A DNA stretch of 64,000 nt from Scyliorhinus canicula. Lineage: Eukaryota. The stretch covers positions 67,852,406 to 67,916,405 of the forward strand of contig NC_052166.1 of the NCBI RefSeq assembly GCF_902713615.1, written 5' to 3'. Every line of letters begins with the position of its first letter. Position 1 is the first letter of the stretch. A program made the translations under genes and the position numbers. A model generated the notes under the pieces. It worked only from the letters and a program-made list of their open reading frames with translations. It made no database searches and had not been told where the DNA came from. Of this stretch, positions 50,301 through 53,300 are shown piece by piece.

Positions 50301-53300
50301 TAAAGCATTCTGGATAATTTTTCTGTGAGGTGAGAGAACCAGCCCTGAGCCATGGCATTGTTACTGACTGACACAGTGCCCTGTGTTAGGACAGGTGAGA
50401 TTAGCCCGGGTTACTGTGAGTGACCAAATCCCACGATGCAAAGTGTGTGTGGACTGCTTAATGCCAAGCTCCAGGATAGCACGTTGCCTTCGCCCTGGTT
50501 AAATAGACAGTCAGCAGTCACTGCATGCGATCTGACACACACAATAGGTTTTAGCGAGGTTGGGAGTCTGGAAGAGTTATGGGGTTGTGGGCAAGGGTTG
50601 GTGTTGGGGGACACTTGTGGGAGTGAACCTGAACAAGATTCAGTCGAAAACAGGAGACAATAAAGTCCCTTGACGTGAGCCGATTTGCCATTTAATTGAA
50701 TAATTGCTGATCTGTATTTTAACTCCATCTACTCACCATGGTTCCGTATCCCTTCAACCCTTACCCCAAAAGATCTACCCCTCAGTTTGAAAATTCTTAA
50801 TTTAACCCTCCACCTCCCTTCCCCCAGAGTTTCACGGGAGGGAGTTACAGATTTCCACTGCCCTCTTTGTGAAGGTGTGCTTCCTGAAATCACTCTGAAC
50901 GAACTGCTACAAATTCCTGGTCCTGCCCCTTGTCCGAGATTTCCCCCCCACCAGAGGAAATATTCACCTTGTCGAATCCCTTAATCATAAAACAACTTGA
51001 TTAGATCACCCTTTATTCTCCTACACTTGAGGGAAGACTGGCCTGGTCTGTGTGAACTGAGCCCATCCGTATTGTTCCTGAGGAGCAGTGCCAAGACTCA
51101 GCACTGTGGCTGGAGTATAACGAGATCTCTGTATTCCAGGCCCCTCCCCAGGCAGGGGGTGTATCTTTTGAGATGTGGGTGGGTTGGAGAGGCGTGAGGA
51201 AAGTGAGAGAGCCAGGACACAGTGCGGACTGGGGTTGGTGCCGAGGTGAAGGTTTGCTCTCTCTCCATCAGGCAGCTTATCGGGACAACACTGTGGGCCT
51301 GCCCAGGTTCAGCCCTGCCGAGAACGTGGAGAAGATTGATCAAAAGTTGCTTCATTCGTTCCTGCGGAATTACTACACTCCGGACAGGTTGGTGCTGGCT
51401 GGAGTCGGAGTGGATCATGAGCAGCTGGTGGAATACGCAAACAGATACCTTCTGGGTACGAGGGCCTGTGTTAAACACACCACTACTTTCATTGTCTCTG
51501 TATCCACTCCCATAATGAAGCAGATTCACAAGGTTAGTCCCAAATATCAAACTGACTTGTCCAGCCCGACAGCAAGAGACCATTCAGACCATCGTGCCTG
51601 TGCTAGCTCCAGAGTTACCCAATTAGTCTCTGTACCCTGGCAGGTGTCACATTACCGCCTCCAACACCCTCTCGGAGCACACTCCAGATGCTCCTAACTC
51701 GTCTATAACAACATTTCCTGCATCTCCTCTGCGGCTCCTTTGCCAATTACTTTAAAGCAGTTACTGACCCCCTGACAGTGGGAACAGTTTTATTCGATCA
51801 GAACTCTTCATGATGTTGAAATGCCTCTCTGCTCAAAAAAGAACAATCACAGTTTTTATAAACCGCTGTTCAACAAGTGCCCCAGAGAGAAGACAGAGCC
51901 TCCGTCAAACACCTTTCCTAAAAGACGGTATCTCCCAACAGTGCGGCGCTCCCTCAGTGCTGACACTGACCCTCTGTTAAGCACTCCCTCAGCACTGACC
52001 CTCTGACAGTGCGGCACTCCCTCAGTACTGACCCTCTGACAGTGCAGCATTCCCTCAGTACTGACCCTCTGACAGTGCAGCACTCCCTCAGTATTGACCC
52101 TCTGACAATGCAGCACTCCCTCAGTACTGACCCTCTGACAGTGCTGCACTCCCTCAGTACTGACCCTCTGACAGTGCGACACTCCCTGAGTACTGACCCT
52201 CTGACAGTGCAGCACTCCCTCAGTACTGACCGTCTGACAGTGCGGCACTCCCTCAGTACTGACCCTCTGACAGTGCGGCACTCCCTCAGTACTGACCCTC
52301 TGACAGTGCGGCACTCCCTCAGTACTGACCCTCTGACAGTGCGGCACTCCCTCAGTACTGACCCTCTGACAGTGCGGCACTCCCTCAGTACTGACCCTCT
52401 GACAGTGCGGCACTCCCTCAGTACTGACCCTCTGACAGTGCGGCACTCCCTCAGTACTGACCCTCTGACAGTGCAGCACTCCCTCGGTACTGACCGTCTG
52501 ACAGTGCGGCACTCCCTCAGTACTGACCCTCTGACAGTGCGGCACTCCCTCAGTACTGACCCACTGACAGTGCAGCGCTCCCTCAGTACTGACCCTCTGA
52601 CAGTGCAGCACTCCCTCAGTACTGACCCTCTGACAGTGCGGCACTCCCTCAGTACTGACCCTCTGACAGTGCGGCACTCCCTCAGTACTGACCCTCTGAC
52701 AGTGCGGCACTCCCTCAGTACTGACCCTCTGACAGTGCAGCACTCCCTCAGTACTGACCCTCTGACAGTGCGGCACTCCCTCAGTACTGACCCTCTGACA
52801 GTGCGGCACTCCCTCAGTACTGACCCTCTGACAGTGCGGCACTCCCTCAGTACTGACCCTCTGACAGTGCGGCACTCCCTCAGTACTGACCCTCTGACAG
52901 TGCAGCACTCCCTCAGTACTGACCCTCTGACAGTGCGGCACTCCCTCAGTACTGACGCTCTGACAGTGCGGCACTCCCTCAGTACTGACCCTCTGACAGT
53001 GCGGCACTCCCTCAGTACTGACCCTCTGACAGTGCGGCACTCCCTCAGTACTGACCCTCTGACAGTGCAGCACTCCCTTGCTGCTGCACATAATGGTGTT
53101 GATCTGGAATTTGGGCTCAAATGTCCAGATTGTGGGTTAAACCCACAATTGGCAGACGCAAAGATAACTGCTTCCCACTGAGCCCTGACTGACACTGTGC
53201 TGAGGTCAGGGGTCAGGGGGGGTTTGTTGAACCTTTTGGTTACACGGATCAACCTCACTCTCTCTCTCTCTCTCTTCAATGCCTGACAGGGGTGACCCCA

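What the first reader, a model, noticed from the sequence alone, without database searches (positions are those of the whole stretch)
51880..53195. SINE-born minisatellite: the same 33-bp unit has expanded inside separate old DeuSINE copies yet is near-identical between loci
Seen: an unexpanded DeuSINE has one unit, CCGACAGTGCAGCTTTCCCTCGGTACT (59207-59233), between ctgaaagacagcacgt and gagtgtcagcc...gaatccacaa. The array at 51940-53077 is bracketed by those same two flanks (ctaaaagacggtatct; ggtgttgatc...gggctcaa...aacccacaa...cactgagccctgactgacac). The 46111 array ends in the head flank (gagtgtcagccc...gggctcaag...gaatccacaa). The 48971 array starts from the body flank (ttcaaaggacggaccctccgacag). 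The 30861 array follows a head-like ctcagcaggtagcactct. The host SINE flanks are heavily diverged from each other, while array units at all four loci share one consensus, including the GGGT linker that the monomer lacks. The unit holds two palindromes, TCAGTACTGA and AGTGC-Y-GCACT. Inference: independent slippage would give locus-specific units. Shared units suggest the array spreads by homology-directed copying (gene conversion, or eccDNA/RNA-templated repair) into pre-existing SINE landing pads, i.e. a non-coding homing minisatellite. I am not aware of a description of this, but cannot check the literature.
Basis: partly seen in the sequence, partly recalled or inferred. Interest (0 to 1): 0.75.

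Follow-up and report, generated by a model that had tools for sequence, protein, structure and literature searches.

The report
Shark SINE-born minisatellite, same unit everywhere
One 33-base piece of an ancient shark jumping element (a SINE) has grown into long tandem arrays at four places in and before one gene, and the repeat units are the same at all four places although the surrounding SINE remains are very decayed; lizards and snakes show the same thing, so it is a new example of a known kind, and how the arrays stay alike is still open.

Summary
Four arrays of one 33-bp unit (33-41 copies each) lie at 30.8, 46.1, 49.0 and 52.0 kb, just upstream of and inside introns of PMPCA. Their majority units are identical. 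Diversity between arrays equals diversity within arrays, so net divergence is zero. The SINE parts that flank them are only 43-64% alike. The 52-kb and 49-kb arrays sit in register inside old Deu-type SINE copies, and the 46-kb array keeps only the SINE head. The flanks of the 30.8-kb array cannot be told from chance.

Independent slippage at each locus is excluded. I see no sign of a young array-carrying SINE subfamily. The "homing" reading is not shown: the flanks are too diverged for homology-directed copying, the arrays share no unit order, and no empty alleles or orthologues could be examined because read laying failed.

The best reading is a SINE-derived minisatellite family kept alike between loci by concerted evolution, that is, exchange of array sequence through recombinational repair. 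SINE-derived satellites of squamate reptiles (PMC10702118) show the same pattern, with units 89% alike between loci against 64% for the SINEs.

Four first-reader notes elsewhere in this genome (three cited below) mention SINE-position arrays; two name a 33-bp unit. None is verified. I class this as a new member of a known kind, of moderate interest.

The parts
51946..53078 (-). 33-bp minisatellite, 52-kb array (the finding). About 32 near-perfect units plus two decayed units at the left (SINE-body) edge, 51946-52013.
   Evidence: TRF; unit-by-unit map (edge units differ at 9 and 5 places, core units at 0-3); sequence.
53079..53200 (-). Old Deu-type SINE head flanking the 52-kb array, joined in register through a decayed half-unit.
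   Evidence: nhmmer hits to the heads at 47.5 and 59.3 kb; z=10.8 against shuffles; alignments A1.
51700..51945 (-). Old Deu-type SINE body flanking the 52-kb array.
   Evidence: nhmmer hit from the 49-kb body, E=0.003; alignments A2.
46111..47436 (-). 33-bp minisatellite, 46-kb array, 40 units, sharp edges.
47437..47545 (-). Old SINE head flanking the 46-kb array. The other (left) side of this array is not SINE-like.
   Evidence: z=17.4 for the head and z=0.1 for the left flank; nhmmer.
48968..50219 (-). 33-bp minisatellite, 49-kb array. It is split by a later insertion of a different SINE family (49034-49257, 9-bp target duplication CTCAGTACT). That insertion plus about 13 units was then duplicated (second copy 49697-49920, period 663 bp).
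   Evidence: Sequence; the two insert copies are 99.1% alike; the insert is 5.3% from its family consensus; shared unit order only between the two halves.
48800..48967 (-). Old SINE body flanking the 49-kb array. Its boundary unit keeps both CpGs and the GTC junction letters.
   Evidence: z=4.9; alignments.
50220..50340 (-). Probable, very decayed SINE head on the other side of the 49-kb array.
   Evidence: z=1.6, 30 of 500 shuffles as good; 45/62 identical to the 52-kb head against about 55% for unrelated flanks.
30863..32224 (+). 33-bp minisatellite, 30.8-kb array, 41 units, opposite orientation, ending about 110 bp before the PMPCA first exon. No flank is verifiably SINE.
   Evidence: flanks at background.
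59090..59320 (-). Unexpanded old Deu-type SINE with a single decayed monomer (59207-59233).
59935..60120 (+). Second unexpanded old Deu-type SINE. It lacks the first 16 nt of the unit segment.

Best explanation
This is a SINE-derived minisatellite family.

Origin (sequence-based inference). The unit is 33 contiguous letters of an ancient SacSINE1-like Deu SINE, taken from the end of the tRNA-like head to the start of the Deu core. In unexpanded copies that segment is bracketed by a short direct repeat of GTGC type. This is the classic set-up for slippage or unequal exchange to make the first duplication.

Position and turnover (shown). At least three of the four arrays sit in register inside very old SINE copies. 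The arrays keep turning over by unequal exchange.

Identity between loci (pattern shown, mechanism inferred). The units show zero net divergence between loci while the flanks have decayed to 43-64% identity. I infer concerted evolution. Array sequence is now and then copied from one locus to another by recombinational repair, either non-allelic gene conversion or synthesis-dependent repair between arrays, or perhaps re-integration of array-derived circles. The long, perfectly matching arrays themselves, or a small earlier local array, supply the homology. The decayed SINE flanks do not.

No function is implied. The arrays are intronic or upstream passengers of PMPCA in a minisatellite-rich stretch.
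For: - Identical majority unit in all four arrays; diversity between arrays equals diversity within.
- Flanks are 43-64% identical. This fits published SacSINE1 copies, which lie about 22-26% from their consensus (PMC5499810).
- Arrays are in register with SINE head and/or body.
- GTGC-type letters lie at both borders of the unit segment in the copies at 59.2, 60.0 and 53.1 kb.
- All arrays share letters that differ from the old monomers: CAGAGG instead of CGGAGG, and the GTC junction. This points to one common source of the present units.
- Ongoing unequal exchange: a 663-bp internal duplication carries an inserted SINE. Private variants have spread to 2-6 units within single arrays.
- Residence time: the 52-kb edge units are decayed, and the 49-kb array predates an insert that is about 5% diverged.
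- Precedent: squamate SINE-derived satellites have units 89% alike between loci against 64% for the SINEs, often with a SINE terminal unit on one side only, and were read as concerted evolution.
Against: - No donor, conversion tract or exchange event is seen directly.
- The arrays share no unit order, and only one rare variant type is shared, between the 46-kb and 52-kb arrays. Exchange, if real, is therefore rarer than turnover inside an array.
- The sample is four loci in one window. Whether arrays elsewhere in the genome have the same unit is known only from unverified notes.
- With zero fixed differences, the upper bound on array age is about 2.3% per lineage. That overlaps the rough age of the SINE insert (5.3%, 11 differences in 207 places), so one fairly recent seeding burst, with no later exchange, is not excluded.
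- A constraint on the unit sequence would give the same picture.
Confidence: 0.5

Rival explanations
1. A ready-made array is copied de novo into old single-unit SINE copies by homology-directed repair (gene conversion, or eccDNA- or RNA-templated repair), with the SINE acting as a landing pad.
For: - Arrays are in register in old SINEs at two loci on both sides and at one locus on one side.
- Transitions from decayed SINE to perfect units are sharp at most junctions.
- The body-side boundary unit at 49 kb keeps both CpGs next to a body whose CpGs have decayed.
- Four of about six Deu-SINE loci in the window carry the array.
- A comparable spread of one satellite into loci already holding another repeat is proposed in Drosophila (PMC7403614).
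Against: - The flanks are 43-64% identical, far below what homologous recombination tolerates. Only the roughly 30-nt monomer could guide repair.
- Three of eight flanks are not SINE.
- No unit order is shared between arrays.
- The 52-kb locus has decayed units that already carry the junction letters at its edge, so it held more than one unit long ago.
- No empty site could be examined.
Confidence: 0.15
2. Ordinary retrotransposition. A Deu-SINE subfamily, or an SVA-like composite, that already carried the array spread it, and the flanks only look old.
For: - Arrays sit at the same SINE position at several loci and, by unverified notes, in other windows.
- The SINE-sense strand of the unit has no T4 run that would stop RNA polymerase III (read).
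- Another note in this genome reports a SINE-minisatellite-SINE block inserted as one piece.
Against: - The flanks of the array-bearing copies are as diverged from each other as from the two unexpanded copies.
- BLAST finds no shared sequence next to the arrays.
- There are no common termini, tails or target duplications around the arrays.
- If the copies were as old as their flanks, about 8 or more fixed differences per array consensus would be expected; 0 are seen.
Confidence: 0.1
3. Independent old expansions held to one sequence by constraint. Either only units that keep the palindromes or bind a factor can multiply inside an array, or the arrays are functional, so every array stays at the same optimum without any exchange.
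For: - The unit holds two perfect palindromes, and three units fold somewhat better than shuffles (z=-2.4).
- The same consensus is kept although private variants arise in each array.
Against: - Variants are not rarer in the palindromic letters than in the spacer: 19 in 19 sites against 19 in 13 sites, p=0.25.
- The 13 spacer letters are also identical between arrays.
- All arrays share letters that differ from the old SINE monomers, which indicates common descent of the units rather than retention of the ancestral state.
Confidence: 0.1
4. Assembly or polishing artefact. Reads from all arrays were pooled, so locus-specific differences were overwritten by the genome-wide majority unit.
For: - Arrays of 1.1-1.4 kb made of identical units are hard to polish.
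- Only contigs, and no raw DNA reads, were on offer to check this.
Against: - Each array keeps its own private variants, several repeated within one array: 14, 7 and 9 private types.
- Flanks and PMPCA exons are in order.
- The arrays are short enough to be spanned by long reads.
Confidence: 0.05

Closest known systems
SINE-derived satellites (sSats) of squamate reptiles (Vassetzky and colleagues 2023, Mob DNA 14:21, PMC10702118)
   Same: - Tandem arrays are built from a portion of a SINE.
- There are many loci.
- A terminal unit runs on into the SINE at one end, at both ends or at neither.
- Units are more alike between loci than the parent SINE copies are (89% against 64% in cobra). This was read as concerted evolution.
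- Longer arrays are more uniform.
   Different: - The host is a shark and the parent is an ancient Deu-type SINE.
- The unit is 33 bp, not about 100-180 bp.
- The contrast is more extreme: zero net divergence between arrays against 43-64% flank identity.
- Chromosomal (subtelomeric) position and genome-wide numbers could not be tested here.
Spread of Rsp-like satellite into 1.688 loci on the Drosophila X (Sproul and colleagues 2020, PMC7403614), and euchromatic Cast satellites of Tribolium (PMC11610590)
   Same: - Near-identical short arrays lie at many euchromatic loci.
- New arrays sit in an older, abundant repeat.
- Interlocus gene conversion and eccDNA re-integration are the proposed mechanisms.
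   Different: - In those cases recent spread is shown by species comparison, junction microhomology and eccDNA sequencing. None of that could be tested here.
- There the pre-existing repeat is another satellite, not a SINE.
TE-derived minisatellites born between short direct repeats (Jurka and Gentles 2006, as cited in PMC3389668; Ahmed and Liang 2012)
   Same: - A piece of a SINE bracketed by a short direct repeat becomes the repeat unit.
- Arrays grow in place after the first duplication.
   Different: Human Alu-derived arrays are mostly single-locus and their units follow the local copy. Here four loci share one unit.
Non-allelic gene conversion among Alu SINEs (for example PMC8230782)
   Same: Sequence is transferred between dispersed SINE copies without transposition, and more often between neighbours.
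   Different: Alu conversion acts on copies that are still similar and moves short tracts. Here the SINE parts are too decayed, so any exchange must run through the arrays.
SVA-type composite retrotransposons (SINE-VNTR-Alu)
   Same: A variable tandem array lies between SINE-derived parts.
   Different: SVA copies share young flanks, a poly(A) tail and target duplications, and move by LINE machinery. The flanks here share nothing recent.

Membership tests
SINE-derived satellite (sSat) as described in PMC10702118 | The repeat unit is a contiguous portion of a SINE. | tested here: met
   The unit is collinear with the single monomer of the unexpanded copy at 59.2 kb and with the junction letters of the SINE parts at 49 and 52 kb.
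SINE-derived satellite (sSat) as described in PMC10702118 | More than four tandem units per locus, at several loci. | tested here: met
   The four arrays hold 41, 40, about 29 and 33 units.
SINE-derived satellite (sSat) as described in PMC10702118 | A terminal unit continues into the SINE at one or both ends. | tested here: met
   Both ends at 52 kb; body clear and head marginal at 49 kb; head only at 46 kb; neither end at 30.8 kb.
SINE-derived satellite (sSat) as described in PMC10702118 | Units are more alike between loci than the parent SINE copies are. | tested here: met
   Between-array diversity is 1.5-2.4% with an identical consensus, against 43-64% identity of the SINE parts.
SINE-derived satellite (sSat) as described in PMC10702118 | Preference for chromosome ends. 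| not testable with these tools
   The window's chromosomal position is unknown. The window is rich in minisatellites of many kinds.
DeuSINE / SacSINE1 family | tRNA-derived head with RNA polymerase III boxes. | tested here: inconclusive
   B-box-like strings are visible in the heads, but Rfam gives no tRNA or other match at E up to 1.
DeuSINE / SacSINE1 family | Deu core domain after the head. | not testable with these tools
   No reference sequence is held. The assignment rests on my recollection of the Deu core and on mutual similarity of the bodies at 48.9, 51.9, 59.1 and 60.0 kb.
DeuSINE / SacSINE1 family | LINE-2-type 3' tail. | not tested
   Tails were not delimited.
Slippage-born minisatellite (short direct repeats bracketing the future unit) | A short direct repeat lies at both borders of the unit segment in unexpanded copies. 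| tested here: inconclusive
   GTGC-type letters precede the segment in the heads at 53.1 and 60.0 kb and end it in the copy at 59.2 kb. The copies are too decayed to show both repeats intact in one copy.
SVA-like composite retrotransposon | Copies share young 5' and 3' parts, a tail and target-site duplications. | tested here: not met
   There is no similarity between array flanks apart from old SINE homology.
Homing element (homology-directed copying into a defined target) | A defined target site is occupied in register. | tested here: inconclusive
   In register at three of the four arrays. Three of eight flanks are not SINE.
Homing element (homology-directed copying into a defined target) | Enough flank homology between donor and target to guide the copying. 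| tested here: not met
   SINE parts are 43-64% identical. Only the roughly 30-nt monomer is shared.
Homing element (homology-directed copying into a defined target) | Empty and occupied versions of the same site exist (alleles or orthologues). | not testable with these tools
Only same-species runs were found. Protein-word routes to other contigs found nothing.

The most novel reading that the evidence does not exclude
The 33-bp array is a non-coding 'homing' repeat. Breaks at the palindromic monomer of old Deu-SINE copies are repaired from arrays elsewhere, or from array-derived circles. The array thereby invades SINE copies across the genome without any transposition machinery, and the SINE copies act as datable landing pads.
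Probability: 0.15. Interest if true: 0.75.

Novelty: new member of a known kind. Interest (0 to 1): 0.4.

Why it matters
How short satellite and minisatellite families reach new euchromatic loci and stay alike between them is an open question. Gene conversion, circular DNA and transposon carriage are all proposed.

This shark family is a clean natural case. The arrays sit at a fixed position inside SINE copies whose decay dates the site. The contrast between array and flank is extreme, at zero against roughly 40-55% difference. Several arrays lie a few kilobases apart in one gene. A genome-wide census, plus orthologous introns in related sharks, could therefore separate local conversion, genome-wide exchange and retrotransposition.

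The case also extends SINE-derived satellites from squamates to cartilaginous fish and to a Deu-type SINE.

A practical point: the arrays are open in three reading frames and give a 474-codon false ORF, so they can mislead gene finders.

Tried and rejected
**Read evidence**
- The look-up of sequencing runs found only runs of the same organism, nearly all kept as contigs.
- One local BLAST inside the script machine still had them in its database. They were not in the query, and I did not use that hit.

**Other loci or species**
- Exact-pattern scans of metagenome contigs and viral contigs found nothing.
- Three protein-word searches found nothing. Two used translated open frames of the array and one used the ORF that runs from the array into the head flank.
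- The costly representative search was not used.
One exon was searched by reference.

**Literature**
- A search for the unit's letters in papers found nothing.
- No paper on shark SINE-derived minisatellites was found.

**Ideas rejected**
- Segmental duplication of a roughly 3-kb block as the reason for the arrays at 46, 49 and 52 kb: the flanks share nothing.
- Recent copying of an array in one piece: no shared unit order.
- A gradient of CpG-intact and CpG-decayed units along the arrays: not significant, p=0.12-0.74. In all four arrays the head-end unit is the decayed type and the body-end unit the intact type (nominal p about 0.003), but I noticed this after the fact.
- The G-rich array at 32.7 kb as a fifth SINE-derived array: the match there is PMPCA coding sequence.
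- Rfam matches for the SINE heads: none.
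Full report
**What is there**

Tandem Repeats Finder lists four arrays with a 33-bp period and essentially one consensus:
- 30863-32224, 41 copies;
- 46111-47436, 40 copies;
- 48968-50219, interrupted;
- 51981-53078, 33 copies, with two decayed units to its left starting near 51946.

The first array is in the opposite orientation to the other three. A 24-nt pattern spanning the junction between units matches 134 times with up to 3 mismatches. Every match is inside these arrays, and 0 are expected from shuffles.

A unit-by-unit map shows mostly perfect units. 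One frequent two-state site is the unit's only CpG, either intact or decayed. Each array also has a handful of private variants.

**Gene context**

The arrays lie in and before PMPCA, which runs on the + strand.
- A GC-rich start region with the first coding letters lies near 32.3 kb, about 110 bp after the first array.
- Exon 2 ends at 32649.
- An exon at 53277-53370 follows the 52-kb array.
- The exon at 58217-58333 matches alpha-MPP structures at E=1e-12.

The lead to PMPCA came from another note on this window.

**The SINE flanks**

Only two unexpanded copies of the parent element are in the window: 59090-59320 on the - strand and about 59935-60120 on the + strand.

Flank by flank:
- The 52-kb array has SINE body on its left and SINE head on its right, joined in register.
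- The head side of the 52-kb array scores z=10.8 against shuffles. The head side of the 46-kb array scores z=17.4 and the body side of the 49-kb array z=4.9.
- The head side of the 49-kb array is marginal (z=1.6), but it is 73% identical to the 52-kb head over 62 aligned places, against about 55% for unrelated flanks.
- The left flank of the 46-kb array and both flanks of the 30.8-kb array score at background.

So four of eight flanks are clearly SINE, one is probably SINE and three are not.

Calling the element a DeuSINE of SacSINE1 type rests on my recollection of the Deu core and on the similarity of these copies to each other. No reference is held, and Rfam gives no match for the heads.

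**Array against flank**

The SINE parts are 43-64% identical to each other. Published SacSINE1 copies lie about 22-26% from their consensus in chimaera, whale shark and skate (PMC5499810), so these are ordinary old copies.

The arrays are a different matter:
- The majority unit is the same in all four.
- Mean pairwise difference between units, leaving out the CpG site, is 1.3-2.5% within arrays and 1.5-2.4% between arrays. Net divergence is therefore zero.
- With no fixed difference in four lineages of 32 sites, the 95% upper bound is about 2.3% per lineage.

An array that turns over neutrally should change its consensus at the single-copy rate. Arrays as old as their flanks should therefore differ at several letters each. 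Independent birth from the local, decayed monomers is excluded. So is simple inheritance from an old array-bearing SINE without later exchange or constraint.

**Where the unit comes from**

The unit is 33 contiguous SINE letters. The 'linker' is not foreign sequence. It occupies the place of the three or four letters that follow the monomer in the SINE body, which are GTGC-type at 59.2 kb. The body-side boundary unit of the 49-kb locus has the same GTC as the arrays. GTGC-type letters also precede the segment in the heads at 53.1 and 60.0 kb. A short direct repeat therefore brackets the future unit, the set-up proposed for Alu-derived minisatellites (cited in PMC3389668).

All four arrays share letters that differ from the old monomers: CAGAGG for CGGAGG, and GTC at the junction. 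The present units thus have one common source.

**The arrays are not brand new, and they turn over**

- The 49-kb array was hit by a SINE of another family, with a clean 9-bp target duplication (CTCAGTACT) that keeps the unit register.
- That insert is 5.3% (11 of 207) from a rough family consensus built from 12 window copies.
- The insert plus about 13 units was later duplicated with a period of 663 bp. The two insert copies are 99.1% alike.
- The 52-kb array has a decay gradient at its body edge: 9, 5, 1, 2, 3, 1, 0, 3, 1 differences per unit, then mostly 0.
- Private variants have spread to 2-6 units within single arrays.
- Unit order is not shared between arrays. A permutation test finds significant shared order only between the two halves of the 49-kb array, which serves as a positive control.
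- Only one rare variant type is shared, between the 46-kb and 52-kb arrays.

**Constraint and structure**

The two palindromes are real, and three units fold slightly better than shuffles (z=-2.4). Variants are not rarer in palindromic letters than in spacer letters: 19 in 19 sites against 19 in 13 sites, p=0.25. The spacer letters are just as identical between arrays.

**Reading**

The data fit a SINE-derived minisatellite family whose arrays exchange sequence between loci often enough to keep one consensus, that is, concerted evolution. The arrays themselves, a kilobase of perfect matches, are the plausible recombination partners. The SINE flanks are too decayed for that role.

It remains possible if the roughly 30-nt monomer guides repair of a break. 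It is not shown, it meets the objections listed above, and I give it about 0.15.

Retrotransposition of an array-bearing subfamily, constraint on the unit, and a polishing artefact are each less likely. The reasons are given with each rival.

**Comparison with what is known**

Vassetzky and colleagues described SINE-derived satellites in 56 squamate genomes (PMC10702118).
- The arrays are built from a SINE portion and occur at up to thousands of loci.
- A terminal unit usually runs into the SINE at one end, sometimes at both ends or neither.
- Units are 89% alike within and between loci in cobra, against 64% for the parent SINE.
- Homogeneity rises with array length.
- The arrays prefer chromosome ends.
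- The authors interpret this as concerted evolution. They state that it is unknown whether such satellites exist outside squamates.

The shark arrays meet every feature I could test, so this is a new member of that kind. It has a shorter unit, a Deu-type parent and a sharper contrast between array and flank.

They are already proposed for Drosophila Rsp-like/1.688 (PMC7403614) and Tribolium Cast satellites (PMC11610590).

**Elsewhere in this genome**

First-reader notes on other pieces of this genome report:
- a 33-bp Deu-SINE segment expanded at four loci;
- five arrays at the same position of a DeuSINE-like element;
- a 33-bp array running into a DeuSINE body.

None has been followed up, and I could not see their sequences. 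They suggest the family is genome-wide, not a local cluster.

**What could not be done**

No other species' DNA could be reached. The decisive tests, a genome-wide census and orthologous or allelic empty sites, remain to be run.

Noticed in passing
window 32650-33354: A G-rich minisatellite (units of 20-28 bp) starts exactly at the 5' splice site of PMPCA exon 2. The exon ends ...GTCGGAG and the intron and array start GTCAGTGTCC. Each unit therefore repeats a donor-like GGTCAGTG, giving dozens of tandem cryptic splice donors right after the true one.
   Followed up: no
window 57759-58145 and 60120-60802: Two 69-bp arrays in inverted orientation differ at only 1 of 69 consensus letters, yet they lie in different contexts. 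One starts inside an unrelated repeat-like stretch (57560-57750). The other starts right after the unexpanded Deu-type SINE at 59935-60120. This is a second minisatellite family with near-identical units at separate loci, so the pattern is not peculiar to the 33-bp unit.
   Followed up: partly
window 49034-49257 and 49697-49920: A tRNA-derived SINE of another family inserted into the 49-kb array with a 9-bp target duplication. It was then duplicated together with about 13 units (period 663 bp). This is a dated marker of unequal exchange inside a minisatellite.
   Followed up: yes
window 51954-53378, - strand: The 33-bp unit is open in three of six reading frames. The 52-kb array yields a 474-codon ORF that runs on into the flank, which is a trap for gene finders.
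   Followed up: partly
window 51762-51785: A string resembling the unit-to-unit junction, including the GGGTC letters, lies about 160 bp left of the 52-kb array, inside the 3' part of the old SINE. It may be a chance resemblance to the SINE's own sequence or a stranded old unit.
   Followed up: no
window 20343-21060, 35926-37619, 43439-43975, 63599-64000: Four further unrelated minisatellites (units of 21, 20, 35 and 33 bp, up to 85 copies). Together with the others, roughly 9-10 kb of the 64 kb is minisatellite, so this stretch is prone to tandem-array growth.
   Followed up: no
They lie in a repeat about 110 bp left of the 49-kb SINE body. I worked beside them.
   Followed up: no
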